From Heptranchias perlo (taxonomy: Eukaryota), in assembly GCF_035084215.1 (NCBI RefSeq), contig NW_027139538.1, positions 1 to 64,000 of the forward strand: DNA of 64,000 nt, given 5' to 3'. Made by a program: the position numbers and the translations under genes. Below, piece after piece: positions 1-23,500 of the stretch. The notes below the pieces were generated by a model that did no database searches, was not told the DNA's origin, and was given only the letters and a program-made list of their open reading frames with translations. Numbering within the stretch: position 1 is the stretch's first letter; every line of letters begins with the position of its first letter.

Positions 1-3000
1 TTGACACATCCCACAGTTATATATAATATATAATAATGGACACACAGTCCCACCTCCAGTACTGGCACATCCCACAGTTATATATAATATATAATAATGG
101 ACACACAGTCCCACCTCCTGTACTGACACATCCCACAGTTATATATAATATATAATAATGGGCACACAGTCCCACCTCCTGTACTGACACACCCCACAGT
201 TATATATAATATATAATAATGGACACACAGTCCCACCTCCTGTATTGACACATCCCACAGTTATATATAATATATAATAATGGGCACACAGTCCCACCTC
301 CTGTACTGACACACCCCACAGTTATATATAATATATAATAATGGACACACAGTCCCACCTCCTGTACTGACACATCCCACAGTTATATATAATATATAAT
401 AATGGACACACAGTCCCACCTCCTGTACTGGCACATCCCACAGTTATATATAATATATAATAATGGACACACAGTCCCACCTCCTGTACTGACACATCCC
501 ACAGTTATATATAATATATAATAATGGGCACACAGTCCCACCTCCTGTACTGACACATCCCACAGTTATATATAATATATAATAATGGACACACAGTCCC
601 ACCTCCTGTACTGGCACATCCCACAGTTATATATAATATATAATAATGGGACACACAGTCCCACCTCCTGTACTGACACATCCCACAGTTATATATAATA
701 TATAATAATGGACACACAGTCCCACCTCCTGTACTGGCACATCCCACAGTTATATATAATATATAATAATGGACACACAGTCCCACCTCCTGTACTGACA
801 CATCCCACAGTTATATATAATATATAATAATGGACACACAGTCCCACCCCCTGTACTGACACATCCCACAGTTATATATAATATATAATAATGGACACAC
901 AGTCCCACCTCCTGTACTGACACATCCCACAGTTATATATAATATATAATAATGGACACACAGTCCCACCTCCTGTACTGACACACCCCACAGTTATATA
1001 TAATATATAATAATGGACACACAGTCCCACCCCCTGTACTGACACACCCCACAGTTATATATAATATATAATAATGGACACACAGTCCCACCTCCTGTAC
1101 TGACACATCCCACAGTTATATATAATATATAATAATGGACACACAGTCCCACCTCCTGTACTGACACACCCCACAGTTATATATAATATATAATAATGGA
1201 CACACAGTCCCACCTCCTGTACTGACACATCCCACAGTTATATATAATATATAATAATGGACACACAGTCCCACCTCCTGTACTGACACATCCCACAGTT
1301 ATATATAATATATAATAATGGACACACAGTCCCACCTCCTGTACTGACACACCCCACAGTTATATATAATATATAATAATGGACACACAGTCCCACCCCC
1401 TGTACTGACACACCCCACAGTTATATATAATATATAATAATGGACACACAGTCCCACCTCCTGTACTGACACATCCCACAGTTATATATAATATATAATA
1501 ATGGACACACAGTCCCACCTCCTGTACTGACACACCCCACAGTTATATATAATATATAATAATGGACACACAGTCCCACCCCCTGTACTGACACATCCCA
1601 CAGTTATATATAATATATAATAATGGACACACAGTCCCACCTCCTGTACTGACACACCCCACAGTTATATATAATATATAATAATGGACACACAGTCCCA
1701 CCTCCTGTACTGACACATCCCACAGTTATATATAATATATAATAATGGACACACAGTCCCACCTCCTGTACTGACACATCCCACAGTTATTTATAATATA
1801 TAATAATGGACACACAGTCCCACCCCCTGTACTGACACACCCCACAGTTATATATAATATATAATAATGGACACACAGTCCCACCTCCTGTACTGACACA
1901 CCCCACAGTTATATATAATATATAATAATGGACACACAGTCCCACCCCCTGTACTGACACATCCCACAGTTATATATAATATATAATAATGGACACACAG
2001 TCCCACCTCCTGTACTGACACACCCCACAGTTATATATAATATATAATAATGGACACACAGTCCCACCTCCTGTACTGACACATCCCACAGTTATATATA
2101 ATATATAATAATGGACACACAGTCCCACCTCCTGTACTGACACATCCCACAGTTATATATAATATATAATAATGGACACACAGTCCCACCTCCTGTACTG
2201 ACACATCCCACAGTTATATATAATATATAATAATGGACACACAGTCCCACCTCCTGTACTGACACATCCCACAGTTATATATAATATATAATAATGGACA
2301 CACAGTCCCACCTCCTGTACTGACACATCCCACAGTTATTTATAATATATAATAATGGACACACAGTCCCACCTCCTGTACTGACACATCCCACAGTTAT
2401 ATATAATATATAATAATGGACACACAGTCCCACCTCCTGTACTGACACATCCCACAGTTATTTATAATATATAATAATGGACACACAGTCCCACCTCCTG
2501 TACTGACACATCCCACAGTTATATATAATATATAATAATGGACACACAGTCCCACCTCCTGTACTGACACATCCCACAGTTATATATAATATATAATAAT
2601 GGACACACAGTCCCACCTCCTGTACTGACACATCCCACAGTTATATATAATATATAATAATGGACACACAGTCCCACCTCCTGTACTGACACATCCCACA
2701 GTTATATATAATATATAATAATGGACACACAGTCCCACCTCCTGTACTGACACATCCCACAGTGATATATAATATATAATAATGGACACACAGTCCCACC
2801 CCCTGTACTGACACACCCACAGTTATATATAATATATAATAATGGGCACACAGTCCCACCTCCTGTACTGACACACCCCACAGTTATATATAATATATAA
2901 TAATGGGCACACAGTCCCACCTCCTGTACTGACACATCCCACAGTTATATATAATATATAATAATGGACACACAGTCCCACCTCCTGTACTGACACATCC

Positions 3001-6000
3001 CACAGTTATTTATAATATATAATAATGGACACACAGTCCCACCTCCTGTACTGACACATCCCACAGTGATATATAATATATAATAATGGACACACAGTCC
3101 CACCTCCTGTACTGACACATCCCACAGTTATATATAATATATAATAATGGACACACAGTCCCACCTCCTGTACTGACACACCCCACAGTTATATATAATA
3201 TATAATAATGGACACACAGTCCCACCTCCTGTACTGACACATCCCACAGTTATATATAATATATAATAATGGACACACAGTCCCACCTCCTGTACTGACA
3301 CATCCCACAGTTATATATAATATATAATAATGGACACACAGTCCCACCTCCTGTACTGACACATCCCACAGTTATATATAATATATAATAATGGGCACAC
3401 AGTCCCACCCCCTGTACTGACACATCCCACAGTTATATATAATATATAATAATGGACACACAGTCCCACCCCCTGTACTGACACATCCCACAGTTATATA
3501 TAATATATAATAATGGACACACAGTCCCACCCCCTGTACTGACACATCCCACAGTTATATATAATATATAATAATGGACACACAGTCCCACCTCCTGTAC
3601 TGACACATCCCACAGTTATATATAATATATAATAATGGCACACAGTCCCACCCCCTGTACTGACACATCCCACAGTTATATATAATATATAATAATGGAC
3701 ACACAGTCCCACCCCCTGTACTGACACATCCCACAGTTATATATAATATATAATAATGGACACACAGTCCCACCTCCTGTACTGACACACCCCACAGTTA
3801 TATATAATATATAATAATGGACACACAGTCCCACCCCCTGTACTGACACATCCCACAGTTATATATAATATATAATAATGGACACACAGTCCCACCTCCT
3901 GTACTGGCACATCCCACAGTTATATATAATATATAATAATGGACACACAGTCCCACCTCCTGTACTGACACACCCCACAGTTATATATAATATATAATAA
4001 TGGACACACAGTCCCACCCCCTGTACTGACACATCCCACAGTTATATATAATATATAATAATGGACACACAGTCCCACCCCCTGTACTGACACATCCCAC
4101 AGTTATATATAATATATAATAATGGACACACAGTCCCACCTCCTGTACTGACACATCCCACAGTTATATATAATATATAATAATGGACACACAGTCCCAC
4201 CTCCTGTACTGACACACCCCACAGTTATATATAATATATAATAATGGACACACAGTCCCACCCCCTGTACTGACACATCCCACAGTTATATATAATATAT
4301 AATAATGGACACACAGTCCCACCTCCAGTACTGACACATCCCACAGTTATATATAATATATAATAATGGACACACAGTCCCACCCCCTGTACTGACACAT
4401 CCCACAGTTATATATAATATATAATAATGGGCACACAGTCCCACCTCCTGTACTGACACATCCCACAGTTATATATAATATATAATAATGGACACACAGT
4501 CCCACCTCCTGTACTGACACATCCCACAGTGATATATAATATATAATAATGGGCACACAGTCCCACCTCCTGTACTGACACATCCCACAGTTATATATAA
4601 TATATAATAATGGACACACAGTCCCACCCCCTGTACTGACACATCCCACAGTTATATATAATATATAATAATGGGCACACAGTCCCACCTCCTGTACTGA
4701 CACATCCCACAGTTATATATAATATATAATAATGGACACACAGTCCCACCTCCTGTACTGACACACCCCACAGTTATATATAATATATAATAATGGACAC
4801 ACAGTCCCACCTCCTGTACTGACACATCCCACAGTTATATATAATATATAATAATGGGCACACAGTCCCACCTCCTGTACTGACACATCCCACAGTTATA
4901 TATAATATATAATAATGGACACACAGTCCCACCTCCTGTACTGACACATCCCACAGTTATATATAATATATAATAATGGGCACACAGTCCCACCTCCTGT
5001 ACTGGCACACCCCACAGTTATATATAATATATAATAATGGACACACAGTCCCACCTCCTGTACTGACACACCCCACAGTTATATATAATATATAATAATG
5101 GGCACACAGTCCCACCTCCTGTACTGACACATCCCACAGTTATATATAATATATAATAATGGACACACAGTCCCACCTCCTGTACTGACACATCCCACAG
5201 TTATATATAATATATAATAATGGACACACAGTCCCACCTCCTGTACTGACACATCCCACAGTTATATATAATATATAATAATGGACACACAGTCCCACCC
5301 CCTGTACTGACACATCCCACAGTTATATATAATATATAATAATGGGCACACAGTCCCACCTCCTGTACTGACACATCCCACAGTTATATATAATATATAA
5401 TAATGGACACACAGTCCCACCTCCTGTACTGACACATCCCACAGTTATATATAATATATAATAATGGACACACAGTCACACCTCCTGTACTGACACATCC
5501 CACAGTTATATATAATATATAATAATGGACACACAGTCCCACCTCCTGTACTGACACATCCCACAGTTATATATAATATATAATAATGGACACACAGTCC
5601 CACCCCCTGTACTGGCACATCCCACAGTTATATATAATATATAATAATGGACACACAGTCCCACCCCCTGTACTGACACATCCCACAGTTATATATAATA
5701 TATAATAATGGACACACAGTCCCACCTCCTGTACTGGCACATCCCACAGTTATATATAATATATAATAATGGACACACAGTCCCACCTCCTGTACTGACA
5801 CACCCCACAGTTATATATAATATATAATAATGGACACACAGTCCCACCCCCTGTACTGACACATCCCACAGTTATATATAATATATAATAATGGACACAC
5901 AGTCCCACCTCCTGTACTGACACATCCCACAGTTATATATAATATATAATAATGGACACACAGTCCCACCTCCTGTACTGACACACCCCACAGTTATATA

Positions 6001-9000
6001 TAATATATAATAATGGACACACAGTCCCACCTCCTGTACTGGCACATCCCACAGTTATATATAATATATAATAATGGGCACAGAGTCCCACCTCCTGTAC
6101 TGACACATCCCACAGTTATATATAATATATAATAATGGGCACACAGTCCCACCCCCTGTACTGACACATCCCACAGTTATATATAATATATAATAATGGA
6201 CACACAGTCCCACCTCCTGTACTGACACATCCCACAGTTATATATAATATATAATAATGGACACACAGTCCCACCTCCTGTACTGACACATCCCACAGTT
6301 ATATATAATATATAATAATGGACACACAGTCACACCTCCTGTACTGACACATCCCACAGTTATATATAATATATAATAATGGACACACAGTCCCACCTCC
6401 TGTACTGACACATCCCACAGTTATATATAATATATAATAATGGACACACAGTCCCACCTCCTGTACTGACACATCCCACAGTTATATATAATATATAATA
6501 ATGGACACACAGTCCCACCCCCTGTACTGACACATCCCACAGTTATATATAATATATAATAATGGACACACAGTCCCACCTCCTGTACTGGCACATCCCA
6601 CAGTTATATATAATATATAATAATGGACACACAGTCCCACCTCCTGTACTGACACATCCCACAGTTATATATAATATATAATAATGGACACACAGTCCCA
6701 CCTCCTGTCCTGACACATCCCACAGTTATATATAATATATAATAATGGGCACACAGTCCCACCTCCTGTACTGACACATCCCACAGTTATATATAATATA
6801 TAATAATGGACACACAGTCCCACCTCCTGTACTGACACATCCCACAGTTATATATAATATATAATAATGGGCACACAGTCCCACCCCCTGTACTGACACA
6901 TCCCACAGTGATATATAATATATAATAATGGGCACACAATCCCACCTCCTGTACTGACACATCCCACAGTTATATATAATATATAATAATGGACACACAG
7001 TCCCACCTCCTGTACTGACACACCCCACAGTGATATATAATATATAATAATGGACACACACTCCCACCTCCTGTACTGACACATCCCACAGTTATATATA
7101 ATATATAATAATGGGCACACAATCCCACCTCCAGTACTGACACATCCCACAGTTATATATAATATATAATAATGGGCACACAGTCCCACCTCCTGTACTG
7201 ACACATCCCACAGTTATATATAATATATAATAATGGACACACAGTCCCACCTCCTGTACTGACACATCCCACAGTTATATATAATATATAATAATGGGCA
7301 CACAGTCCCACCCCCTGTACTGACACATCCCACAGTGATATATAATATATAATAATGGGCACACAATCCCACCTCCTGTACTGACACATCCCACAGTTAT
7401 ATATAATATATAATAATGGACACACAGTCCCACCCCCTGTACTGACACATCCCACAGTTATATATAATATATAATAATGGACACACAGTCCCACCTCCTG
7501 TACTGGCACACCCCACAGTTATATATAATATATAATAATGGACACACAGTCCCACCTCCTGTACTGGCACACCCCACAGTTATATATAATATATAATAAT
7601 GGACACACAGTCCCACCCCCTGTACTGACACACCCCACAGTTATATATAATATATAATAATGGACACACAGTCCCACCTCCTGTACTGACACATCCCACA
7701 GTTATATATAATATATAATAATGGACACACAGTCCCACCCCCTGTACTGACACACCCCACAGTTATATATAATATATAATAATGGACACACAGTTCCACC
7801 CCCTGTACTGACACACCCCACAGTTATATATAATATATAATAATGGACACACAGTCCCACCTCCTGTACTGACACATCCCACAGTTATATATAATATATA
7901 ATAATGGACACACAGTCCCACCTCCAGTACTGACACATCCCACAGTTATATATAATATATAATAATGGACACACAGTCCCACCCCCTGTACTGACACATC
8001 CCACAGTTATATATAATATATAATAATGGACACACAGTCCCACCCCCTGTACTGACACATCCCACAGTTATATATAATATATAATAATGGACACACAGTC
8101 CCACCTCCTGTACTGACACACCCCACAGTTATATATAATATATAATAATGGACACACAGTCCCACCCCCTGTACTGACACATCCCACAGTTATATATAAT
8201 ATATAATAATGGACACACAGTCCCACCTCCTGTACTGACACACCCCACAGTTATATATAATATATAATAATGGACACACAGTCCCACCTCCTGTACTGAC
8301 ACATCCCACAGTTATATATAATATATAATAATGGACACACAGTCCCACCCCCTGTACTGACACATCCCACAGTTATATATAATATATAATAATGGACACA
8401 CAGTCCCACCCCCTGTACTGACACATCCCACAGTTATATATAATATATAATAATGGACACACAGTCCCACCTCCTGTACTGACACACCCCACAGTTATAT
8501 ATAATATATAATAATGGACACACAGTCCCACCTCCTGTACTGACACATCCCACAGTTATATATAATATATAATAATGGACACACAGTCCCACCCCCTGTA
8601 CTGACACATCCCACAGTTATATATAATATATAATAATGGACACACAGTCCCACCCCCTGTACTGACACATCCCACAGTTATATATAATATATAATAATGG
8701 ACACACAGTCCCACCTCCTGTCCTGGCACATCCCACAGTTATATATAATATATAATAATGGACACACAGTCCCACCCCCTGTACTGACACATCCCACAGT
8801 TATATATAATATATAATAATGGACACACAGTCCCACCTCCTGTACTGACACATCCCACAGTTATATATAATATATAATAATGGACACACAGTCCCACCTC
8901 CTGTACTGACACATCCCACAGTTATATATAATATATAATAATGGACACACAGTCCCACCCCCTGTACTGACACATCCCACAGTTATATATAATATATAAT

Positions 9001-12000
9001 AATGGACACACAGTCCCACCCCCTGTACTGACACATCCCACAGTTATATATAATATATAATAATGGACACACAGTCCCACCTCCTGTACTGACACATCCC
9101 ACAGTTATATATAATATATAATAATGGACACACAGTCCCACCTCCTGTACTGACACATCCCACAGTTATATATAATATATAATAATGGGCACACAGTCCC
9201 ACCTCCTGTACTGACACATCCCACAGTTATATATAATATATAATAATGGACACACAATCCCACCCCCTGTACTGACACATCCCACAGTTATATATAATAT
9301 ATAATAATGGGCACACAGTCCCACCCCCTGTACTGACACATCCCACAGTTATATATAATATATAATAATGGGCACACAGTCCCACCTCCTGTACTGACAC
9401 ATCCCACAGTTATATATAATATATAATAATGGGCACACAGTCCCACCTCCTGTACTGACACATCCCACAGTTATATATAATATATAATAATGGACACACA
9501 GTCCCACCCCCTGTACTGACACATCCCACAGTTATATATAATATATAATAATGGACACACAGTCCCACCTCCTGTACTGACACATCCCACAGTTATATAT
9601 AATATATAATAATGGGCACACAGTCCCACCTCCTGTACTGACACATCCCACAGTTATATATAATATATAATAATGGGCACACAATCCCACCTCCTGTACT
9701 GACACATCCCACAGTTATATATAATATATAATAATGGACACACAGTCCCACCTCCTGTACTGACACATCCCACAGTTATATATAATATATAATAATGGAC
9801 ACACAGTCCCACCTCCTGTACTGACACATCCCACAGTTATATATAATATATAATAATGGACACACAGTCCCACCCCCTGTACTGACACATCCCACAGTTA
9901 TATATAATATATAATAATGGACACACAGTCCCACCTCCTGTACTGGCACACCCCACAGTTATATATAATATATAATAATGGACACACAGTCCCACCTCCT
10001 GTACTGGCACACCCCACAGTTATATATAATATATAATAATGGACACACAGTCCCACCCCCTGTACTGACACACCCCACAGTTATATATAATATATAATAA
10101 TGGACACACAGTCCCACCTCCTGTACTGACACATCCCACAGTTATATATAATATATAATAATGGACACACAGTCCCACCCCCTGTACTGACACACCCCAC
10201 AGTTATATATAATATATAATAATGGACACACAGTCCCACCTCCTGTACTGACACATCCCACAGTTATATATAATATATAATAATGGACACACAGTCCCAC
10301 CCCCTGTACTGACACACCCCACAGTTATATATAATATATAATAATGGACACACAGTTCCACCCCCTGTACTGACACACCCCACAGTTATATATAATATAT
10401 AATAATGGACACACAGTCCCACCTCCTGTACTGACACATCCCACAGTTATATATAATATATAATAATGGACACACAGTCCCACCCCCTGTACTGACACAT
10501 CCCACAGTTATATATAATATATAATAATGGACACACAGTCCCACCTCCTGTACTGACACATCCCACAGTTATATATAATATATAATAATGGACACACAGT
10601 CCCACCTCCTGTACTGACACATCCCACAGTTATATATAATATATAATAATGGACACACAGTCCCACCTCCAGTACTGACACATCCCACAGTTATATATAA
10701 TATATAATAATGGACACACAGTCCCACCCCCTGTACTGACACATCCCACAGTTATATATAATATATAATAATGGACACACAGTCCCACCTCCTGTACTGA
10801 CACACCCCACAGTTATATATAATATATAATAATGGACACACAGTCCCACCTCCTGTACTGACACATCCCACAGTTATATATAATATATAATAATGGACAC
10901 ACAGTCCCACCCCCTGTACTGACACATCCCACAGTTATATATAATATATAATAATGGACACACAGTCCCACCCCCTGTACTGACACATCCCACAGTTATA
11001 TATAATATATAATAATGGACACACAGTCCCACCCCCTGTACTGACACATCCCACAGTTATATATAATATATAATAATGGACACACAGTCCCACCTCCTGT
11101 ACTGACACATCCCACAGTTATATATAATATATAATAATGGACACACAGTCCCACCTCCTGTACTGACACATCCCACAGTTATATATAATATATAATAATG
11201 GACACACAGTCCCACCCCCTGTACTGACACATCCCACAGTTATATATAATATATAATAATGGACACACAGTCCCACCTCCTGTACTGACACATCCCACAG
11301 TTATATATAATATATAATAATGGACACACAGTCCCACCTCCTGTACTGGCACATCCCACAGTTATATATAATATATAATAATGGACACACAGTCCCACCT
11401 CCTGTACTGGCACATCCCACAGTTATATATAATATATAATAATGGACACACAGTCCCACCCCCTGTACTGACACATCCCACAGTTATATATAATATATAA
11501 TAATGGGCACACAGTCCCACCCCCTGTACTGACACATCCCACAGTTATATATAATATATAATAATGGACACACAGTCCCACCCCCTGTACTGACACATCC
11601 CACAGTTATATATAATATATAATAATGGGCACACAGTCCCACCCCCTGTACTGGCACATCCCACAGTTATATATAATATATAATAATGGACACACAGTCC
11701 CACCTCCTGTACTGACACATCCCACAGTTATATATAATATATAATAATGGACACACAGTCCCACCTCCTGTACTGACACATCCCACAGTTATATATAATA
11801 TATAATAATGGACACACAGTCCCACCTCCTGTACTGGCACATCCCACAGTTATATATAATATATAATAATGGACACACAGTCCCACCTCCTGTACTGACA
11901 CATCCCACAGTTATATATAATATATAATAATGGGCACACAGTCCCACCTCCTGTACTGACACATCCCACAGTTATATATAATATATAATAATGGACACAC

Positions 12001-12561
12001 AGTCCCACCCCCTGTACTGACACATCCCACAGTTATATATAATATATAATAATGGACACACAGTCCCACCTCCTGTACTGACACACCCCACAGTTATATA
12101 TAATATATAATAATGGACACACAGTCCCACCTCCTGTACTGGCACATCCCACAGTTATATATAATATATAATAATGGGCACACAGTCCCACCTCCTGTAC
12201 TGACACATCCCACAGTTATATATAATATATAATAATGGACACACAGTCCCACCTCCTGTACTGACACATCCCACAGTTATATATAACATATAATAATGTA
12301 CACACAGTCCCACCTCCTGTACTGACATATCCCACAGTTATATATAATATATAATAATGGACACACAGTCCCACCTCCTGTACTGGCACATCCCACAGTT
12401 ATTTATAATAGATAATAATGGACACACAGTCCCACCTCCTGTACTGGCACATCCCACAGTTATATATAATATATAATAATGGACACACAGTCCCACCTCC
12501 TGGACTGACACATCCCACAGTTATATATAATATATAATAATGGACACACAGTCCCACCTCC
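1..12561. repeat. 61-bp tandem satellite (~206 copies), runs off the left edge
   Basis: Unit CACAGTTATATATAATATATAATAATGGACACACAGTCCCACCTCCTGTACTGACACATCC repeated head to tail. It shifts 1 nt per 60-nt line, giving a period of 61. A few recurrent variant sites (GGA/GGG, CTC/CCC, TGA/TGG, ATC/ACC, GTT/GTG). Confidence 0.99.
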
Positions 12562-12562
12562 T

Positions 12563-12721
12563 GGAGGGAGAGAGGGTGAGGAACGGGGAGAGGGAGAGAG
12601 GGTGAGGGAGGGAGGGAGAAGGTGAGGGAGGGAGGGGGAGAGGGAGAGAGGGAGAGGGTGAGGGAGGGGGAGAGGGAGAGAGGGAGAGAGGGTGAGGGAG
12701 GGAGGGGGAGAGGGGGAGAGG
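12563..12721 (+). repeat. Polypurine (G/A-rich) low-complexity tract
   Basis: Almost pure G/A with GGG runs (GAGGGAGAGAGGGTGAGGGAGGGAGG...), lying between the satellite and the J RSS. Confidence 0.95.
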
Positions 12722-12738
12722 CTCACGCAGGGGGCAGA

Positions 12739-12777
12739 GGATATTGTACAGCTCCTGCACTGTCAGCTCTCAGTGTG
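12739..12777 (-). promoter_or_regulatory. Recombination signal sequence of the J segment (23-bp spacer)
   Basis: Plus strand reads nonamer GGATATTGT (12739-12747; consensus GGTTTTTGT, 7/9), exactly 23-nt spacer (12748-12770), heptamer CAGTGTG (12771-12777; consensus CACTGTG, 6/7) abutting the J coding sequence. A 23-spacer at J is the kappa-type configuration. Confidence 0.92.
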
Positions 12778-12812
12778 GGTTACGTTCGGTAAAGGAACCA
12801 AGCTCAGACTCA
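12778..12812 (+). CDS. IGKJ: Immunoglobulin light-chain J segment (kappa/NS4-like), germline unrearranged
   Basis: g GTT ACG TTC GGT AAA GGA ACC AAG CTC AGA CTC A encodes VTFGKGTKLRL, with the FGxGT motif. A phase-1 donor GTGAGT follows at 12813. It splices in frame to the C exon (A+CC = Thr, then REKVQPS). Too short for the ORF track. Confidence 0.95.
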
Positions 12813-13396
12813 GTGAGTAAATTTACTAACCATTATTAACCCGTTAAATGCTGAACCTTTCTCACACACCAATGCTGAATACTCGAAGGTGTTGGTGGGG
12901 AGCTGCGGTGAATGAAATGGTTCATTGAAGAGTACTTTGTATGACAGGGTCCCAGGCGGTACTTTCTTTAGTTCCACTCCCCCCTTCGACCAGCAAAGTA
13001 TAAGTAACAAACTTTTACTGAGAGTGTGGAGGAGATCTGGGCGTTTGCAGACTGCAGTCACATTCCTGCACCATTGAGTGGAATAACTCACTGGAATCCT
13101 GGCAGTCTCAGTGCCAACAGACACGGGCAGAGTGTGGGGTGAGCCCTGGGCACTCTGTGCCCTGTAGGACTCTCTCTGATGTAACTGAGCACAGCATCAG
13201 CACAGTGAGACAAGCACAGAGGTCCCACCTCGAAACACACAACTCTCCTCCAGCTTTAACTGGGAGATCTGTCCAGTCCCCCGTTACCTGGTGTCCAAGT
13301 TCTGCTCACAAACGGGTACAGCAGGGCTCTCAATCGATTGGATTCATGTTCAAGGGGTTTGGGGAGACTCTCAGTTGCTTTTTCTTTGGGTCGAGT

Positions 13397-13601
13397 CCAG
13401 GTCGATATTTACCCCAAAAACCAACATCGCTAAAAATGGCCATTTATCTCATTGCTGTTTGTGGGATCTTGCTGTGCACAAATTGGCTGCCACATTTCCC
13501 ACATTACAACAGTGACTACACTTCAGAAAAAGTACTTCATTGGCTGTAAAGCACTTTGGGCGGTCCTGGGATTGTGAAAGGTGCCATAAAAATACAAGTT
13601 C
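13397..13601 (+). mobile_element. 5'-truncated Deu-domain SINE (SacSINE1/AmnSINE1-like), 3' portion
   Basis: CATTGCTGTTTGTGGGATCTTGCTGTGCACAAATTGGCTGCC...ACAACAGTGACTACACTTCA...TTCATTGGCTGTAAAGCACTTTGGG...AAAGGTGCCATAAAAATACAAG. It aligns internally with 14677-14756. Family assignment is from recall of the DeuSINE consensus. Confidence 0.8.
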
Positions 13602-14011
13602 CTCCCATTCTTTTGATGAACTGGGGTCTCAGACAATTCCCCTGTTTAAATCTGAACCGGCAGAAAATCCCCCCAGAAAACTGATTAATATTGGCCTGAT
13701 TTGTCTGCGTGTTTATTAGACGTGACAGACCAGACAGGGAGAGTTTCACCAGCAACAAAGGACGTTCCATTCGTGCCCGTCCCACTTTCCCGATCGACTT
13801 ACGACATTCTTACAGGTAAACAATCTCTGCCCACTGCCATCGACCGGTTCCATATCACCCCTCTAGACTGTAGGCATACCCGTGATCTGCTCCCCTCCTC
13901 TCTCCTGAAGGCACTGCCTCTGGCTGGGGTAAAGCTCCACCTTCCCCAAGTGGGGTCATTCCTCCAAGTCTGAGCCCGGAGGGTGAGCGCGGCAGGCTAT
14001 TCGACCATGAG

Positions 14012-14756
14012 GTGTCAGCCATGGCTCAGTGGGTATCACTCTCACCTCTGGGTCAGAAGGTCGTGGGTTCAAGACCCACTCCAGAGACTTGAGCCCATAA
14101 TCCAGGCTGACACTCCCGGTGCAGTACTGAGGGAGTGCTGCACTGTCGGAGGGCCAGTACTGAGGGAGTGCTGCACTGTCGGAGGGTCAGTACTGAGGGA
14201 GTGCTGCACTGTCGGAGGGCCAGTACTGAGGGAGTTCTGCACTGTCGGAGGGTCAGTACTGAGGGAGTGCTGCACTGTCGGAGGGCCAGTACTGAGGGAG
14301 TTCTGCACTGTCGGAGGGCCAGTACTGAGGGAGTGCTGCACTGTCGGAGGGCCAGTACTGAGGGAGTGCTGCACTGTCGGAGGGTCAGTACTGAGGGAGT
14401 GCTGCACTGTCGGAGGGCCAGTACTGAGGGAGTTCTGCACTGTCGGAGGGCCAGTACTGAGGGAGTGCTGCACTGTCGGAGGGCCAGTACTGAGGGAGTT
14501 CTGCACTGTCGGAGGGCCAGTACTGAGGGAGTGCTGCACTGTCGGAGGTGCCGTCTTTCGGGTGAGACATTAAACCGAGGCCCCGTCTGCCCTCTCAGGT
14601 GGATGTAAAAGATCCCACAGCACGATTTGAAGAAGAGCAGTGGAGTTCACCCCGGTGTTAAAACAGATGATCTGCTCATTGCTGTTTGTGGGATCTTGCT
14701 GTGTGCAAATTGGCTGCTGTGTTTCTCACATAAAAACAGTGACTGCACTTCAAAAG
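14012..14756 (+). mobile_element. tRNA-derived Deu-domain SINE (SacSINE1-like) with internal VNTR; 3' tail missing
   Basis: Pol III box A TGGCTCAGTGG (14022-14032) and box B GGTTCAAGACC (14066-14076). Deu core GTCGGAGGTGCCGTCTTTCGGGTGAGACATTAAACCGAGGCCCCGTCTGCCCTCTCAGGTGGATGTAAAAGATCCC. Confidence 0.85.
14122..14548. repeat. 33-bp minisatellite (13 copies) inside the SINE
   Basis: Unit CAGTACTGAGGGAGTGCTGCACTGTCGGAGGGC/T. It produces the 11-aa periodic ORFs in the track. Confidence 0.97.
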
Positions 14757-14764
14757 TGGGAGAA

Positions 14765-14959
14765 TCCTGATCCTGACCCTGACCCTCCCTGACCTTGACC
14801 CCGATCCTGAACCTGACCCTCCCTGACCCTGATCCTGACCCTGACCCTCCCTGACCTTGACCCCGATCCTGACCCTCCCTGACCCTGATCCTGACCCTGA
14901 CCCTCCCTGACCTTGACCCCGATCCTGACCCTCCCTGACCCCGATCCTGACCCTGACCC
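14765..14959. repeat. Degenerate (CCCTGA)n hexamer repeat
   Basis: CCTGATCCTGACCCTGACCCTCCCTGACCTTGACCCCGAT...; a short echo at ~15008-15030. The reverse strand reads (TCAGGG)n. Confidence 0.93.
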
Positions 14960-15570
14960 ATTGTCCACACTCACCTTCCAGGGGGTCGTGGGATAATTAG
15001 GAGCGGTGACCCTCCCTGACCCTGACCCTGAGGTCAATTGTAGCCTGACCCCAGTGCTGGGAGGCAAGGTTTTCAATGAAATCTGGAACCTTCTCCACCC
15101 AGCCCCACGATGAAGCCTTTCTGAAGTGTGTTGATACAAGTCTGCTCCAGGGTCCAATGTTCTGGGGTAAAGTTCCCCCTGATCTGTGTGTGATCTGAGC
15201 TTTGTTAATGCTGAGCCTGTTTCCTCCAGATAGACTGATCTATAGTTCGAGCTTCCTGCCCGGTTAACAGCGTCTTAAAGGGACACCCAGTCTTTAAGTA
15301 CTCTGACTATTAACCATTTCATCGCTGAATTTGTGGCAACCCTTCATTGCAGATGTTTATCGAACAGTCCAATCTGATTTATCCATCTTAACATCAAACC
15401 ATCCGGTGTATTTATATTTAGATTAAATTTGAGAGGCAAAAAAAAGCAAATTAAGAATTAGCGATGCTCACCTGAAATGGTTAATCGTCCGCCGGGAGTT
15501 CATTGTCCCAGCAATCCGTTATCTGAGGTGAATTTTCCAAACACAGAAACACCCACAGAGACACGCACCC

Positions 15571-16225
15571 AAATATACACAACAGAACACACCAATATAC
15601 ACAACAGAACACACCAATATACACAACAGAACACACCAATATACACAACAGAACACACCAATATACACAACAGAACACACCAATATACACAACAGAACAC
15701 ACCAATATAGACAAAAGAATGCACCAATATACACAACAGAACACACCAATATGCACAACAGAACGCACCAATATACACAACAGAATGTGCACCAATATAC
15801 ACAACAGAATGTGCACCAATATGCACAACAGAATGTGCACAAATATACACAACAGAACACACCAATATACACAAAAGAATGCACCAATATACACAACAGA
15901 ATGTGCACAAATATACACAACAGAACACACCAATATGCACAACAGAATGTGCACAAATATACACAACAGAACACACCAATATGCACAACAGAATGCACCA
16001 ATATACACCACAGAATGTACACAAATATACACAACAGAACACACCAATATACACAACAGAACACACCAATATGCACAACAGAACACACCAATATACACAA
16101 CAGAACACACCAATATACACAACAGAATGCACCAATATACACAACAGAATGTACACAAATATACACAACAGAACACACCAATATACACAACAGAATGTGC
16201 ACAAATATACACAACAGAACACCCA
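15571..16225. repeat. 22/24-bp CA-rich minisatellite (~29 copies)
   Basis: Unit AATATACACAACAGAACACACC with a longer variant AATATACACAACAGAATGTGCACA/C. Confidence 0.96.
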
Positions 16226-16355
16226 AGTACACACACACAGATGTGTCACATTAAGTTGTACGACTGACACTAATACCTTCCCCAGCCTGTCTGCTCAGGA
16301 GCAGGTTTCTGCACCGTGAACATGTGTCTCATTACATATTCATGACACCGGGTTC

Positions 16356-16363
16356 ATTTGCAT
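16356..16363 (+). promoter_or_regulatory. Ig octamer motif ATTTGCAT (candidate intronic enhancer element)
   Basis: Perfect octamer in non-repetitive intron sequence, with E-boxes CATGTG at 16321 and CATGTGG at 16656. Function is inferred only. Confidence 0.4.
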
Positions 16364-16716
16364 TTCTTTTCCCATCACTTGCCTTTCTCTTCAGCCTTTT
16401 AAAGTAAAGTCTGAGCCCATTTCCCCCCAGACTCTGGGCCTTTTCCATTTTGGGATGTTGGTTGTTTTAAGATGGTGTTTCGAGGGGCCATTCCCGAGGG
16501 TCTGTGACACAGGAAGTGCTGTTGTCTGACAGTTATTCCTTGTATTCACCACCCCAGCTCCGTGCAGCTCTCCCGGTCGATCTGCTCTGAATGGAGACAG
16601 GACACTGGCTGCCTGCCGTAGTCACAAGACTGTGACCCGCCCAGCTCCCCAATGGCATGTGGGCACTGAGACACACACACCAGGAGGAGCCCAGCTTCAT
16701 TCCCTGGTCCGTGCCG

Positions 16717-16975
16717 AGGAACAGGAGGAGGCCATTCAGCCCCTCCAGCCTGTTCCTCCATTGAATGAGATCATGACTGGTCTGTCCCTGATCTCCATTT
16801 ACCCTCCTTTGCTCCATATCCTCGATACCCTCCCCCAACAAAAATCGATCCATCTCAGTACTGAAAGCTCCTATTGACCCCCACCATCCACAGCCTTTTG
16901 GGGGAGGGGGTTCCAGATTTCCACTCCCCCTTGAGTGAAAAAGTGCTTCCTGATTTCACCCCTGAATGGCCAGGC
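16717..16975 (-). mobile_element. CR1-type LINE 3' fragment
   Basis: Plus strand begins AGGAACAGGAGGAGGCCATTCAGCCCCTCCAGCCTGTT, the reverse complement of a CR1-like 3' end. The minus-strand translation DRFLLGEGIEDM resembles the CR1 ORF2 C-terminus. It is similar to 18212-18370. Confidence 0.72.
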
Positions 16976-16983
16976 TCGAATTA

Positions 16984-17033
16984 CATAGAATTACATGGAA
17001 TTTACAGCACAGAAACAGGCCATTCGGCCCAAC
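16984..17033 (-). mobile_element. Very short CR1-type 3' end
   Basis: CATAGAATTACATGGAATTTACAGCACAGAAACAGGCCATTCGGCCCA closely matches 17292-17338. Confidence 0.6.
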
Positions 17034-17291
17034 AGTAGTGTTAGGATTGTGTCCCCTTGTTCTGGGGGGGTTGCCGCTGAGGAGCAGCCGTTGGACTTGG
17101 TGCCCCCTCTAAATGAGGGAAAGGGGTTCCTGCTCCTGATTGCCATCCAGCGACACCCCCCTTCTCTCCCCCAACACCCCCCACTGTTGAAGGCAATGGT
17201 TTCAGGAGATGAGGGGAGAATGAACACAGAAACACAGTGAGGGCCAGTCCCTGTGTTATCTTGTCCCACTCTTACCCTGTGTGGGGGGTTT

Positions 17292-17697
17292 CATAGAATC
17301 ACAGAATCATACAGCACAGAAGGAGGCCATTCGGCCCATCCTCCCTCTGCTAGCTCTTTGAAAGAGCTATCCAATTAGTCTCACTCCCCTGCTCTTTCCC
17401 CAGAGCCCTGACATTTTTTCCCTTTTCAAGTATTTATTCGGTTCCCTTTTGAAAGTTACTATTGAATCTTCCTCCCCCCACCCTTTCAGGCCGTGTGTTC
17501 CAGATCACAACAACTCGCTGAGCAAAACAATTTCTCCATCTCTCCTCTCTGGTTCTTTACCAATTACCTCAAACCCGTTACCTCTGGTTACCGACCCTCC
17601 TGCCACTGGAAACAGTTCCTCCCGATTTGCTCCATTAAAACCCTTCATGATTTTGAGCACCTCTATTAAATCTCCCCTTGACCTTCTCTGCTCGAAG
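17292..17697 (-). mobile_element. CR1-type LINE 3' fragment (ORF2 C-terminus plus 3' UTR)
   Basis: Minus-strand peptide RRSRGDLIEVLKIMKGFNGANREELFPVAGGSVTRGNGFEVIG matches the CR1 ORF2 tail motif RRLRGDLIEVYKI...LFP...TRGH. It ends in an (ATTCTRTG)-like terminal microsatellite. Confidence 0.88.
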
Positions 17698-17787
17698 GGT
17701 CGTCTCAATAACACCACACAGTTTTGCTGGCCCGTTTTACTGGCTGTTCATTTTATGCTCTCCCCTCATGGGATCAGACTCTGTCGA

Positions 17788-18424
17788 TCTGCTGCCCGTA
17801 TCCTAACTCGTACCAAGTCCCGTTCACCCATCACCCCAGTGCTCGCTGACCTACATCGGCTCCCGGTCCAGCAAAGTCCTCATCTTTGTTTTCAAATCCC
17901 TCCATGGCCTTGCCCTGCCCAATCTCTGTAACCTCCTCCAGCCCTACAACCCTCCGAGATCTCTGCGCTCCTCCAATTCTGGTCTCTTGTTCATCCCCGA
18001 TTTTCATCGCTCCACCATTGGCGGCCGTGCCTTCAGCTGCCTGGGCCCTAAGCTCTGGAATTCCCGCCCTAAACTTCTTTGCCCCTCCCCCTCTCTCTCC
18101 TCCTTTAAGACGCTCCTTCAAACCTACCTCTTTGACCAAGCTTTGAGTCACCAGTCCTAATATCTCCTCAAGAGTCAATTTCTGTCCGAGAAACTTCCTG
18201 TGAAGCGCCTTAGGGACATGGGAAAAGGAGGAGGCCATTCAGCCCCTCGAGCATGTTCTGTCATTCAATTAGATCATGGCTGATGTGCATCGTAACTCTG
18301 TCCACCGGCCTTCATTTCCTGACCCTTAATAATCTTGTCTAACAAAAACCTATCGGTCTCAGTTTTGAATCCTTGGGATGTTTTACCATGTTAAAGGCAC
18401 CATATAAATGCAAGTTGTTGTTGT
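17788..18424 (+). mobile_element. L2-clade LINE 3' fragment, interrupted near its tail
   Basis: Peptide SAARILTRTKSRSPITPVLADLHRLPVQQ fits the L2-type AAR...HITPVL..LHWLPV motif and is followed by frameshifts. The tail CTGTGAAGCGCCTT // GGGATGTTTTACCATGTTAAAGGCACCATATAAATGCAAG(TTG)n ends at 18424. Confidence 0.82.
18212..18370 (-). mobile_element. CR1-type 3' fragment nested in the L2 tail
   Basis: GGAGGAGGCCATTCAGCCCCTCGAGC...CATTCAATTAGATCATGGCTGAT is homologous to 16724-16785 and splits the L2 tail. Confidence 0.72.
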
Positions 18425-18596
18425 AGTGGAGTGCAGGTCAATAAGAGGTTGTCGTGGGTACGGTGCGGGGCTCCTCAGACTGGCCCTGTGCTGCCAGCCG
18501 AGGCCTTGCCCACCGTCCCACTCTGGCCCTCGCGAGGAGGCCTCGGGGAGAGACTCCAAACTCCCATTAAAAGTCCTTGTCTTTCATCTCTTCCAG

Positions 18597-18925
18597 CCCG
18601 AGAGAAGGTTCAACCATCGCTGACCCTGATGCCCCCCTCCCCGGAGGAGGTCTCGGCCAAGGGCACTGCCACCCTGGTGTGCCTCGTCGATCACTTCTAC
18701 CCCGACGCTGTGGGGGTGGAGTGGAAGAAGGACGGGGCGGCCATTTCGGGCGGGGTTCAGACCAGTGACTACCTGCGAGCTTCGGACAACACCTACAGTG
18801 TCAGTAGCCTGCTGACCCTCTCCGGCTCCGACTGGAAGTCTGACGCCAGCTTCTCCTGCGCCATCACCCACGAGACCCTTCAGTCTCCCCTCAGCAAGAG
18901 CATCAGGAGAACAGAATGTTCATAG
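18597..18925 (+). CDS. IGKC: Immunoglobulin light-chain constant exon, kappa (shark NS4/type III-like)
   Basis: (T)REKVQPSLTLMPPSPEEVSAKGTATLVCLVDHFYPDAVGVEWKKDG...YSVSSLLTLSGSDWKSDASFSCAITHETLQSPLSKSIRRTECS*. This is a C1-set domain with both Cys, the Trp, FYP and a penultimate Cys for the H-L disulfide. AG acceptor at 18595-18596, TAG at 18923-18925. Kappa assignment comes from recalled similarity to nurse shark NS4 and the 23-RSS on J. Confidence 0.96.
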
Positions 18926-19081
18926 AGCGTCAGAGACAGTCCACAGAGGAGACGGAACCTTAAATATAACAGGGGGCGAGTGGGGAGGGCAAAGGTCATT
19001 GTCAGCACTGCATTTCGACTCTCTTCCTTATCGTGATTGGGTCTGAGACGCTTCTCAGGTTGGGGGTTAAGGCACATTATT

Positions 19082-19694
19082 GGGACAGTGTAGAGGGAGC
19101 TTTACTCTGTATCTAACCCGTGCTGTACCTGCCCTGGGAGTGTTTGATGGGACAGTGTAGAGGGAACTTTACTCTGTATCTAACCCGTGCTGTACCTACC
19201 CTGGGAGTGTTTGATGGGACAGTGTAGAGGGAGCTTTACTCTGTATCTAACCCGTGCTGTACCTGCCCTGGGAGTGTTTGATGGGACAGTGTAGAGGGAA
19301 CTTTACTCTGTATCTAACCCGTGCTGTACCTACCCTGGGAGTGTTTGATGGGACAGTGTAGAGGGAGCTTTACTCTGTATCTAACCCGTGCTGTACCTGC
19401 CCTGGGAGTGTTTGATGGGACAGTGTAGAGGGAGCTTTACTCTGTATCTAACCCGTGCTGTACCTACCCTGGGAGTGTTTGATGGGACAGTGTAGAGGGA
19501 GCTTTACTCTGTATCTAACCCGTGCTGTACCTGCCCTGGGAGTGTTTGATGGGACAGTGCAGAGGGAGCTTTACTCTGTATCTAACCCGTGCTGTACCTG
19601 CCCTGGGAGTGTTTGATGGGACAGTGCAGAGGGAGCTTTACTCTGTATCTAACCCGTGCTGTACCTGCCCTGGGAGTGTTTGATGGGACAGTGT
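19082..19694. repeat. 67-bp minisatellite (9 full copies plus a partial) in the putative 3' UTR
   Basis: Unit GGGACAGTGTAGAGGGAGCTTTACTCTGTATCTAACCCGTGCTGTACCTGCCCTGGGAGTGTTTGAT; copies start at 19082, 19149 ... 19685. Confidence 0.98.
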
Positions 19695-19709
19695 CGACTT
19701 GTGATGCCA

Positions 19710-20513: not shown

Positions 20514-23500
20514 CATGCCCCTGAGTGTCAGTGTGACTGTTTCCCAGTACTGTCTGTAGGTGGATGTCCCTGACTGTCAGTGTGACTGTTACCCAGTACT
20601 GTCGGTAGGTGCATGTCGCTGACTGTCAGTGTGACTGTTACCCAGTACTGTCTGTAGGTGGATGGCCCTGACTGTCAGTGTGACTGTTTCCCAGTACTGT
20701 CTGTAGGTGCATGTCCCTGACTGTCAGTGTGACTGTTACCCAGTACTGTCTGTAGGTGCATGTCCCTGACTGTCAGTGCGACTGTTACCCAGTACTGTCT
20801 GTTGGTGGATGTGCCTGACTGTCAGTGCGACTGTTACCCAGTACTGTCTGTAGGTGCATGTCCCTGACTGTCGGTGCGACTGTTACCCAGTACTGTCTGT
20901 AGGTGGATGTGCCTGACTGTCAGTGCGACTGTTACCCAGTACTGTCTGTAGGTGCATGTCCCTGACTGTCAGTACGACTGTTTCCCAGTACTGTCTGTAG
21001 GTGGATGTCCCTGACTGTCGGTGCGACTGTTCCCCAGTACTGTCTGTAGGTGCATGTCCCTGACTGTCAGTATGACTGTTACCCAGTACTGTCTGTAGGT
21101 GGATGTCCCTGACTGTCGGTGCGACTGTTACCCAGTACTGTCTGTAGGTGGATGTCCCTGACTGTCGGTGCGACTGTTCCCCAGTACTGTTTGTATGTGC
21201 ATGTCCCTGACTGTCAGTATTACTGTTACCCAGTACTGTCTGTAGGTGCATGGCCCTGACTGTCGGTGCGACTGTTACCCAGTACTGTCTGTAGGTGCAT
21301 GTCCCTGTCAGTGTGACTGTTACCTCGTACTGTCTGAAGGTGCATGTCCCTGTCAGTGTGACTGTTACCCAGTACTGTCTGTTGGTGGATGTCCCTGACT
21401 GTCGGTGCGACTGTTACCCAGTACTGTCTGTTGGTGCATTTCCCTGACTGTCGGTGCGACTGTTTCCCAGTACTGTCTGTAGGTGCATGTCCCTGACTGT
21501 CGGTGCGACTGTTACCCAGTACTGTCTGTAGGTGGATGTCCCTGACTGTCGGTGCGACTGTTACCCAGTACTGTCTGTAGGTGCATGTCCCTGACTGTCG
21601 GTGCGACTGTTACCCAGTACTGTCTGTTGGTGCATGTCCCTGACTGTCAGTACGACTGTTACCCAGTACTGTCTGTTGGTGCATGTCCCTGACTGTCAGT
21701 ACGACTGTTTCCCAGTACTGTCTGCAGGTGCATGTCCCTGACAGTCGGTGCGACTGTTACCCAGTACTGTCTGTAGGTGCATGTCCCTGTCAGTGTGACT
21801 GTTACCTCGTACTGTCTGTAGGTGCATGTCCCTGACTGTTAGTGTGACTGTTACCCAGTACTGTCTGTTGGTGCATGTCCCTGACTGTCAGTACGACTGT
21901 TTCCCAGTACTGTCTGTAGGTGCATGTCGCTGACTGTCGGTGCGACTGTTTCCCAGTACTGTCTGTAGGTGCATGTTCCTGTCAGTGTGACTGTTACCTC
22001 GTACTGTCTGTAGGTGCAGGTCCCTGACTGTCAGTGTGACTGTTACCCAGTACTGTCTGTTGGTGCATGTCCCTGACTGTCAGTACGACTGTTACCCAGT
22101 ACTGTCTGTAGGTGCATGTCCCTGACTGTCAGTACGACTGTTTCCCAGTACTGTCTGTAGGTGCATGGCCCTGACTGTCAGTGCGACTGTTACCCAGTAC
22201 TGTCTGTAGGTGGATGTCCCTGACTGTCGGTGCGACTGTTACCCAGTACTGTCTGTAGGTGCATGGCCCTGACTGTCGGTGCGACTGTTACCCAGTACTG
22301 TCTGTAGGTGCATGGCCCTGACTGTCGGTGCGACTGTTACCCAATCCTGTCTGTAGGTGCATGGCCCTGACTGTCGGTGCGACTGTTACCCAGTACTGTC
22401 TGTAGGTGCATGGCCCTGACTGTCGGTGTGACTGTTACCCAGTACTGTCTGTAGGTGCATGTCCCTGACTGTCAGTGTGACTGTTACCCAGTACTGTCTG
22501 TAGGTGGATGTCCTTGACTATCGGTGTGACTGTTACCCAGTACTGTCTGTAGGTGCATGTCCCTGACTGTCAGTGTGACTGTTACCCAGTACTGTCTGTA
22601 GGTGCATGTCCCTGCCTGTCGGTGTGACTGTTACCCAGTACTGTCTGTAGGTGGATGTCCTTGACTGTCGGTGTGACTGTTACCCAGTACTGTCTGTAGG
22701 TGGATGTCCTTGACTGTCGGTGTGACTGTTACCCAGTACTGTCTGTTGGTGGATGTCCCTGACTGTCAGTGTGACTGTTACCCAGTACTGTCTGTAGGTG
22801 GATGTCCCTGACTGTCAATGTGACTGTTTCCCAGTACTGTCTGTAGGTGCATGTCCCTGACTGTCAGTATGACTGTTACCCAGTACTGTCTGTAGGTGGA
22901 TGTGCCTGACTGTCAGTGCGACTGTTACCCAGTACTGTCTGTAGGTGCATGTCCCTGACTGTCAGTACGACTGTTTCCCAGTACTGTCTGTAGGTGGATG
23001 TCCCTGACTGTCGGTGCGACTGTTCCCCAGTACTGTCTGTAGGTGCATGTCCCTGACTGTCAGTATGACTGTTACCCAGTACTGTCTGTAGGTGGATGTC
23101 CCTGACTGTCGGTGCGACTGTTACCCAGTACTGTCTGTAGGTGGATGTCCCTGACTGTCGGTGCGACTGTTCCCCAGTACTGTCTGTATGTGCATGTCCC
23201 TGACTGTCAGTATTACTGTTACCCAGTACTGTCTGTAGGTGCATGGCCCTGACTGTCGGTGCGACTGTTACCCAGTACTGTCTGTAGGTGCATGTCCCTG
23301 TCAGTGTGACTGTTACCTCGTACTGTCTGAAGGTGCATGTCCCTGTCAGTGTGACTGTTACCCAGTACTGTCTGTTGGTGGATGTCCCTGACTGTCTGTG
23401 CGACTGTTACCCAGTACTGTCTGTTGGTGCATTTCCCTGACTGTCGGTGCGACTGTTTCCCAGTACTGTCTGTAGGTGCATGTCCCTGACTGTCGGTGCG

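What the first reader, a model, noticed from the sequence alone, without database searches (positions are those of the whole stretch)
1..12812. Unrearranged kappa J with no V for >12.7 kb: a satellite fills or has replaced the V-J interval
Seen: intact J with RSS, preceded only by a 160-bp purine tract and at least 12.5 kb of 61-bp satellite. Known: cartilaginous-fish light chains occur as V-J-C miniclusters in which V usually lies a short distance (hundreds of bp) from J or is germline-joined. Inference: either a VNTR has greatly stretched the V-J interval, making rearrangement efficiency potentially depend on array length, or this is a V-less J-C cluster that is orphaned or borrows V segments from other clusters.
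Basis: partly seen in the sequence, partly recalled or inferred. Interest (0 to 1): 0.8.

Follow-up and report, generated by a model that had tools for sequence, protein, structure and literature searches.

The report
Shark kappa J-C behind RSS-derived satellite
A shark antibody kappa light-chain gene has an intact J and C that are expressed, but the DNA where its V segment should sit is at least 12.5 kb of a 61-bp satellite that grew from the short sequence normally lying just after the V's recombination signal, so the V-J gap is stretched rather than the gene orphaned.

Summary
A 61-bp satellite (about 206 units, 97% alike) fills window 2-12563. A 158-bp purine tract follows. Then come an intact 23-spacer RSS (12739-12777), J (12778-12812), a 5784-bp intron and a kappa/type III C exon (18597-18925). 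No V-like sequence lies anywhere in the 64 kb, on either strand.

Two new results:
- Every satellite unit carries, in V-to-J orientation, a heptamer-like CACAGTT, an AT-rich stretch, and a block reading HTVPPPVLTHPT. That block directly follows the V 12-RSS in unrearranged kappa gene models of Heterodontus, Cetorhinus and Scyliorhinus (29.6 bits against 15.8±1.9 for shuffles). The array therefore grew out of the V-proximal end of the V-J interval.
- Contigs of three RNA runs from the same sample show the exact J-to-C splice. They also show a V-J junction (YCQQYQRYPP|TFGKG) on a J of this sequence.

The "VNTR-stretched interval" reading is favoured and the "dead orphan" reading is disfavoured.

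Still open: the V itself lies beyond the window edge. An allele or near-identical paralogue could be the expressed copy. Other unchecked notes of this scan report RSS-derived minisatellites elsewhere in this genome.

The parts
2..12563 (+). 61-bp satellite, about 206 units. Each unit is a heptamer-like CACAGTT (6 units have a perfect CACAGTG), then the 21-nt AT-rich ATATATAATATATAATAATGG, then the 33-nt block ACACACAGTCCCACCTCCTGTACTGACACATCC. The array reaches the window edge.
   Evidence: TRF and unit segmentation. No foreign insert. The block reads HTVPPPVLTHPT and matches the post-V-RSS read-through of P0004, P0012, P0016, P0024 and P0025. The match is 29.6 bits against a shuffle maximum of 23.5.
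12564..12721 (+). Purine-only (GAGGGAGA)n-like tract between the array and the J RSS. The array ends mid-unit, after ..CCACCTCCTG.
12739..12777 (+). J recombination signal, kappa type: nonamer GGATATTGT, 23-nt spacer, heptamer CAGTGTG.
   Evidence: Sequence and RSS scan. Its translation AEDIVQLLHCQLSVW matches the read-through of the J RSS in Heterodontus P0004 (RAEDIVQPLHWKLSVW) and Cetorhinus P0012, so the signal is orthologously conserved.
12778..12812 (+). J kappa coding segment (V)TFGKGTKLRL, with a GT donor at 12813.
   Evidence: Sequence and tblastn. The splice joint 12812>18597 appears in RNA contigs. A V-J junction loose end at 12782 reads TACTGTCAGCAGTATCAGAGATACCCCCCA.
12813..18596 (+). 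J-C intron, 5784 bp, with GT..AG ends. It is full of interspersed repeats, a 33-bp x13 array (14122-14548), a 22-bp x30 array (15572-16241) and one octamer ATTTGCAT (16356-16363).
18597..18925 (+). Constant exon of a kappa (type III/NS4) light chain, 108 codons plus the stop, ending ..RRTECS*.
   Evidence: Pfam C1-set 2.2e-24. It is 85% identical to Heterodontus francisci kappa-like, 82% to Squalus, and 48-50% to ray lambda-like chains. A DNA contig spans the whole exon at the same depth as neighbouring unique DNA. RNA depth runs into the thousands with no variant letters.
20514..64000 (+). 49-bp satellite, about 890 units, 93% alike, reaching the window end. It shows no similarity to the cluster or to the 61-bp unit.

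Best explanation
This is a working kappa (type III/NS4) light-chain minicluster whose V-J intervening DNA has been blown up from the usual ~0.5 kb to at least 12.7 kb. The cause is tandem amplification of a 61-bp piece of that same interval.

The amplified piece is the V-proximal end of the interval. It holds a degenerate copy of the V's heptamer, spacer and nonamer, followed by a ~33-nt block that sits directly after the V 12-RSS in other sharks. In those sharks the block ends in a second CC-CACAGT motif. One inferred route to a 61-nt period is unequal exchange or slippage between that motif and the true V-end heptamer.

The V is therefore expected at the far (5') end of the array, in the same orientation as J. 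RAG would join the V 12-RSS to the J 23-RSS by deletion, excising the whole array. The V promoter would then drive a transcript that splices J to C over the 5.8-kb intron.

Shown here: the intact J RSS, J and C; the origin of the monomer; the J-to-C splice; and a V-J junction on a J of this sequence.

Inferred: the position of the V, excision of the array, and that the transcripts come from this copy.
For: (1) Monomer origin. HTVPPPVLTHPT(VI) is encoded on the + strand in every unit. It matches residues 128-141 of gene models that read through the germline V RSS: 11/12 to Heterodontus P0004, 11/14 to Scyliorhinus P0024, 9/10 to Cetorhinus P0012, and weakly (5/6, in another frame) to Chiloscyllium P0020. 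The match always lies about 23 residues after YYC. The best score is 29.6 bits; 200 shuffles gave 15.8±1.9 with a maximum of 23.5.

(2) The units start with CACAGTT or CACAGTG, as a V heptamer would.

(3) The J RSS is intact, has a 23-nt spacer and is conserved with other sharks. The kappa-type 12/23 arrangement is as in PMC5985310.

(4): the joint 12812>18597 (GT..AG) is present in three RNA-type runs (depths 4252, 12871 and 822) and absent from the DNA run. A loose end before 12782 reads YCQQYQRYPP in frame with TFGKG. No variant letters appear in J or in the first 128 nt of C.

(5) The DNA contigs run unbranched through J. They also run unbranched through the whole C exon, at the depth of neighbouring unique DNA. 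This argues against many identical paralogues.
Against: - The V was not seen, because the array reaches the window edge.
- All runs are Logan contigs from one sample, so there are no raw reads, no strand information and no long-read span.
- The only DNA contig over J (X1 record 1) differs from the window at 5 bases plus a 2-nt deletion in 741 nt but has an identical RSS and J. An allele or a 99% paralogue therefore exists and could be the expressed copy.
- DNA depth is ~5 on the J side and ~15 on the C side. That fits heterozygosity, but it also fits 2-3 copies of the C side.
- The homology was tested at protein level through gene models, not on the other species' DNA.
Confidence: 0.6

Rival explanations
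1. V-less J-C unit. The satellite expansion, or an unequal exchange within it, has deleted the cluster's own V. The J then either receives V segments from other kappa clusters (inter-cluster or inversional joining) or is never rearranged.
For: There is no V in 64 kb on either strand. The unit is isolated between two large satellites. Cluster-external joining is discussed for fish IgL (PMC5192425).
Against: The monomer derives from the sequence that touches the V RSS, which is most simply explained by in-situ growth beside a V. A V-J junction on this J sequence and a strong J-C splice are present. Rearrangement in sharks usually occurs within a cluster (PMC12227049).
Confidence: 0.15
2. The expressed, rearranging gene is another copy (the other haplotype or a ~99% identical paralogue) with a normal short V-J spacer. 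On this reading the copy in the window, with its huge array, is silent or is a haplotype-specific expansion.
For: DNA run X1 holds only a variant version of 12725-13465 (5 substitutions plus a 2-nt deletion) with identical J and RSS. Depth is ~5 on the J side against ~15 on the C side.
Against: The contigs do not branch at J or C. The variant contig also continues 58 nt upstream, into where the purine tract lies. The RNA runs hold unique intron pieces of the window with 0 mismatches, including the unspliced intron-C border 18254-18623.
Confidence: 0.15
3. Assembly artefact: either the satellite-J junction is a false join or the array length is wrong, and the true locus is an ordinary minicluster.
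For: Long homogeneous arrays at window edges are places where assemblies fail. No read data were laid over the junction at 12563/12564.
Against: The window has no N. The array ends mid-unit inside the very block that belongs to the V-J interval, and it lies in the correct orientation relative to J, which a random misjoin would not produce. A short-read contig passes from the J flank upstream beyond 12725.
Confidence: 0.1

Closest known systems
Nurse shark NS4 / horned shark type III (kappa) split V-J-C miniclusters
   Same: Same isotype: the C exon is 74-85% identical. It has a single J with the FGKGTKLRL motif, one C exon, a 23-spacer J RSS and a QQ..P.T-type CDR3 in transcripts. The RSS-flanking non-coding sequence is conserved.
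   Different: NS4 split genes have a 502-524 bp V-J spacer (PMC2193156). Here the spacer is at least 12.7 kb and consists almost wholly of one 61-bp satellite. The V is not in view, and the cluster is followed by more than 43 kb of a second satellite.
Germline-joined shark light-chain genes
   Same: Both are departures from the standard split minicluster in cartilaginous fish.
   Different: They are the opposite kind of change. In germline-joined genes the RSS and spacer are removed. Here the J RSS is intact and the spacer is enlarged.
Translocon-type kappa loci (tetrapods, sterlet IgL2)
   Same: The V-J distance is far more than a kilobase, the 12/23 kappa-type signals are the same, and one C serves them (PMC5985310).
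   Different: Only one J is present, and there is no evidence for several V segments. The long distance is satellite DNA, not a V array.
Cryptic or decoy RSS tracts
   Same: About 200 heptamer-bearing units lie in V orientation next to a J.
   Different: The units are poor signals. The heptamer is CACAGTT in 194 of 200 units. The nonamer scores 3/9 at a 12-nt spacing, and 6/9 only at a 23-nt spacing, which the 12/23 rule bars from pairing with the J 23-RSS. No use of the units by RAG was tested.

Membership tests
Cartilaginous-fish kappa (type III/NS4) light-chain minicluster | C1-set constant exon orthologous to type III/kappa C | tested here: met
   Pfam PF07654, 2.2e-24. It is 85% and 80% identical to Heterodontus kappa entries, 82% to Squalus, and 48-50% to ray lambda-like chains.
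Cartilaginous-fish kappa (type III/NS4) light-chain minicluster | J segment with FGXG motif, splice donor, and a 23-spacer RSS (kappa-type 12/23) | tested here: met
   J 12778-12812, RSS 12739-12777. The RSS is conserved with Heterodontus and Cetorhinus read-through models.
Cartilaginous-fish kappa (type III/NS4) light-chain minicluster | Leader plus V exon with 12-RSS a few hundred bp upstream of J | tested here: not met
   No V-like sequence lies in the 12.7 kb upstream or anywhere else in the window. Only relics of the V-RSS flank are present, amplified as the satellite. What lies beyond the window cannot be seen.
Cartilaginous-fish kappa (type III/NS4) light-chain minicluster | Somatic V-J joining and expression as V-J-C mRNA | tested here: inconclusive
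   The J-to-C splice joint is in 3 RNA-type runs, and an in-frame V-J junction sits on a J of this sequence. These are contigs only, and an allele or paralogue with an identical J is not excluded.
Orphan / pseudogene J-C remnant | Broken RSS, J or C, or no spliced or rearranged transcripts | tested here: not met
   The RSS, J, splice sites and C reading frame are all intact. Spliced and rearranged transcripts are present.
Germline-joined VJ gene | V and J fused in one exon without RSS | tested here: not met
   The RSS is intact and no V sequence precedes J.
Translocon-type locus | Several V and several J segments serving one C | not testable with these tools
   Only one J lies in the window.

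The most novel reading that the evidence does not exclude
Amplification of RSS-flanking DNA into satellites may be a recurrent process at this shark's antigen-receptor loci, perhaps tied to RAG itself. Breaks or nicks at the V signal in the germ line, where shark RAG is known to have acted, could seed tandem duplication. The conserved block just 3' of the kappa V 12-RSS may be a functional cis-element whose ~200-fold copy number alters RAG loading or the accessibility of this cluster.
Probability: 0.12. Interest if true: 0.8.

Novelty: new variant of a known kind. Interest (0 to 1): 0.55.

Why it matters
Shark light-chain genes are the textbook case of compact V-J-C miniclusters with a ~0.5-kb V-J gap. 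This cluster apparently still works with a gap at least 25 times longer, filled with ~200 degenerate copies of the V's own signal flank. That makes it a natural experiment on three questions:
- Does distance matter for within-cluster joining?
- How does RAG ignore tandem near-signals?
- How do satellites arise at recombination signals?

The work also exposes a short non-coding block beside the kappa V RSS that is conserved across at least three shark orders and has no known role. The practical caveat is that the V has not been seen.

Tried and rejected
- The stretch upstream of J translates as AEDIVQLLHCQLS and looks a little like a V FR3 end (EDVADYYCQQS). I considered a truncated germline-joined VJ and rejected it. 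The same string occurs upstream of J in unrearranged Heterodontus and Cetorhinus models, so it is the conserved J RSS read as protein.
- A V hidden inside either satellite or on the minus strand: none found.
- The 49-bp satellite as a derivative of the J RSS or of the 61-bp unit: only 8-11-nt chance matches.
- Higher-order repeat structure in the 61-bp array: none. There are only local duplicated runs of unit variants.
- The satellite units as good 12-RSS decoys: the nonamer is 3/9 at a 12-nt spacing.
- Assigning kappa or lambda from human structures is ambiguous: lambda 90.8 bits against kappa 82.5 bits. The question was settled with shark sequences.
Word searches gave no note of a kappa V.
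- PMC3129705 and PMC7094790 are not held.
The C exon was used alone or inside its own genomic ORF, and J was read in place.
Full report
**Layout of the window**

The window has no N. TRF finds a 61-bp satellite from 2 to 12563 (206 copies, 97% matches). A purine tract follows at 12564-12721. A second satellite of 49 bp (890 copies, 93%) runs from 20514 to the window end.

Only 12564-20513 is non-satellite. K-mer and self-identity scans show no foreign insert of 60 nt or more in either array.

**The J segment and its signal**

Directly after the purine tract lies a J-type recombination signal:
- nonamer GGATATTGT at 12739-12747 (7/9);
- a spacer of exactly 23 nt;
- heptamer CAGTGTG at 12771-12777 (6/7).

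The J coding segment follows at 12778-12812 (VTFGKGTKLRL), with a GT donor at 12813.

**The C exon**

The C exon spans 18597-18925 behind an AG acceptor. It is a C1-set domain (Pfam 2.2e-24) ending in RRTECS and a stop.

**Isotype**

Human structures do not decide the isotype: lambda scores 90.8 bits and kappa 82.5 bits. Shark sequences do decide it:

| Relative | Identity to the C exon |
|---|---|
| Heterodontus francisci, 'kappa light chain-like' | 85% |
| H. francisci, kappa secretory form | 80% |
| Squalus | 82% |
| Cetorhinus, Hemiscyllium, Chiloscyllium, Scyliorhinus, nurse shark | 74-79% |
| Ray 'lambda-1-like' chains | 48-50% |

The 23-spacer on J fits the kappa-type 12/23 arrangement (PMC5985310). 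The runs are coded. The nearest C sequences being squalomorph and Heterodontus is compatible with that name.

**No V in the window**

tblastn with 33 shark and ray light chains finds J and C and nothing V-like on either strand. No consensus V-type RSS is present.

The array runs into position 1, so 12.7 kb is a lower bound set by the window, not by biology.

**What the satellite is made of**

The same tblastn gave an unexpected result. Five automatic gene models of unrearranged kappa clusters read through the germline V signal into the V-J spacer. They are P0004 (Heterodontus), P0012 and P0016 (Cetorhinus), and P0024 and P0025 (Scyliorhinus torazame). They read:

..YYCQQ..YTV IQSL TKT(S/P) IHT(V/A/F)PPP(V/G)L(T/R)HPT..

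- YTV covers the heptamer.
- IQSL is 12 nt of spacer.
- TKT covers the nonamer.
- The next ~12 residues are the first spacer sequence after the V 12-RSS.

Every 61-bp unit of the satellite encodes HTVPPPVLTHPT(VI) on the + strand. The matches are 11/12 to P0004, 11/14 to P0024 and 9/10 to P0012. Chiloscyllium P0020 gives THSTTS against THSPTS in another frame, at the same distance from YYC.

The best score is 29.6 bits. Two hundred shuffles of the unit gave 15.8±1.9 with a maximum of 23.5.

Each unit starts with CACAGTT; 6 of 200 units start with a perfect CACAGTG. Then come 21 AT-rich nucleotides where the spacer and nonamer would be, and then the conserved block.

The monomer is therefore a degenerate copy of the V signal plus the block that follows it, in V-to-J orientation. 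The array ends mid-unit, inside the block, where the purine tract starts.

In Scyliorhinus the block is itself followed by ..HPTV.., a second CC-CACAGT motif. Two such motifs about 60 nt apart would be a ready substrate for unequal exchange with a 61-nt period. This mechanism is my inference and was not tested.

The translation of the J signal region (AEDIVQLLHCQLSVW) also matches the read-through of the J signal in Heterodontus and Cetorhinus models. This validates the J RSS as orthologous. It also disposes of my passing idea that the stretch is a relic of a V FR3.

**Expression**

One search found DNA runs (X1-X4) and probable RNA runs (X5-X7, X9) of a single sample, all kept as contigs. I laid X1, X5, X6 and X7 on 12725-18724 at 97% likeness or better.

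- The joint 12812>18597, with GT..AG ends, is present in all three RNA-type runs (depths 4252, 12871 and 822). It is absent from the DNA run.
- In X6, two contigs carry TACTGTCAGCAGTATCAGAGATACCCCCCA before position 12782. This reads YCQQYQRYPP in frame with TFGKG, a normal kappa V-J junction with 4 nt trimmed from J.
- No variant letters are reported in J or in the first 128 nt of C in any RNA run.
- DNA contigs pass unbranched through J (record 1).
- A DNA contig (record 8, about 18402-19099) also passes unbranched through the whole C exon, at the depth of neighbouring unique DNA (14.5 against 11.9-16.6).
- Unique intron pieces, including the unspliced intron-C border (18254-18623), are present in RNA runs with no mismatches.

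Taken together, this J-C unit is most likely transcribed, spliced and joined to a V.

**Caveats on expression**

- Contigs cannot give strand, ends or phase.
- The only DNA contig over J differs from the window at 5 bases and a 2-nt deletion in 741 nt, yet has the same RSS and J. An allele or a 99% paralogue therefore exists.
- DNA depth on the J side (~5) is about a third of that on the C side (~15). This fits heterozygosity, but also 2-3 copies of the C side.
- The junction between satellite and purine tract was outside the laid stretch. The 6000-letter limit forced a choice between that junction and the C exon.

**Comparison with what is known**

Cartilaginous-fish IgL genes are described as V-J-C miniclusters that usually rearrange within the cluster (PMC12227049; PMC5192425). 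Nurse shark NS4 split genes have a 502-524 bp V-J spacer (PMC2193156).

This locus is the same isotype with the same parts, but it has a spacer at least 25 times longer, made of one satellite seeded from the spacer's own V-proximal end.

A search of the held literature for minisatellites linked to recombination signals found nothing comparable.

Other first-stage notes on this genome report a 36-bp minisatellite of 12-RSS-like signals downstream of an IgV gene, a 15-copy array of a V-RSS nonamer, and a D1-like RSS minisatellite. They are unchecked. If they hold, RSS-flank amplification is a recurrent feature of this genome. That would make this locus less exceptional and the phenomenon more interesting.

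**Are the units RAG decoys?**

As 12-RSS the units are poor: the nonamer TAATAATGG scores 3/9. At a 23-nt spacing the nonamer-like ACACAGTCC scores 6/9, but a 23-signal cannot pair with the J 23-RSS under the 12/23 rule. Decoy use seems unlikely and was not tested.

**Verdict**

A V supplied from elsewhere, expression from another copy, and an assembly error remain possible at about 10-15% each. I rate it as a new variant of a known kind, of moderate interest.

Noticed in passing
window 20296-20333 (+): A J-oriented signal, GGTGTTGGT, 22 nt, CACTGTG (heptamer 7/7, nonamer 7/9), lies 1.4 kb after the C stop codon and just before the 49-bp satellite. No J-like coding follows it. It resembles a kappa-deleting-element-type signal. 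This is the subject of another note (s1-882504).
   Followed up: partly
window 12759-12765: A second heptamer-like CACTGTC sits inside the J RSS spacer, 11 nt after the nonamer, so the J signal could also be read as an 11/12-spaced signal. Heterodontus and Cetorhinus read LHWK here rather than LHCQ, so the motif is not conserved.
   Followed up: partly
window 16356-16363 (+): A single Ig-type octamer ATTTGCAT lies in the J-C intron. It is the only one in 64 kb (0.09 expected; 8 of 100 shuffles have at least one). It could belong to an intronic enhancer or a sterile-transcript promoter, or it could be chance.
   Followed up: no
window 20514-64000: More than 43 kb of a 49-bp satellite lies directly downstream of the cluster. 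Its unit-length variants recur at ~2-kb intervals near the start (dips at 21.2, 23.2 and 25.2 kb), which suggests a higher-order repeat.
   Followed up: partly
window 14020-14548, 15572-16241, 19081-19694: A tRNA-like SINE head is followed by a 33-bp x13 array. There is a 22-bp x30 array in the intron and a 67-bp x9 array in the 3' flank of C. The whole locus is unusually rich in minisatellites.
   Followed up: no
proteins P0001, P0002: Two shark kappa VJ-C fragments are filed in public databases as Aeromonas veronii and Salmonella enterica proteins, on contigs of 507 and 990 nt. They are evidently contaminants of bacterial assemblies.
   Followed up: no
proteins P0004, P0012, P0016, P0024, P0025, P0020: A non-coding block directly 3' of the kappa V 12-RSS (reading IHTxPPPxLTHPT in the gene models) is conserved in Heterodontus, Cetorhinus and Scyliorhinus, and weakly in Chiloscyllium. 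Its function is unknown.
   Followed up: partly
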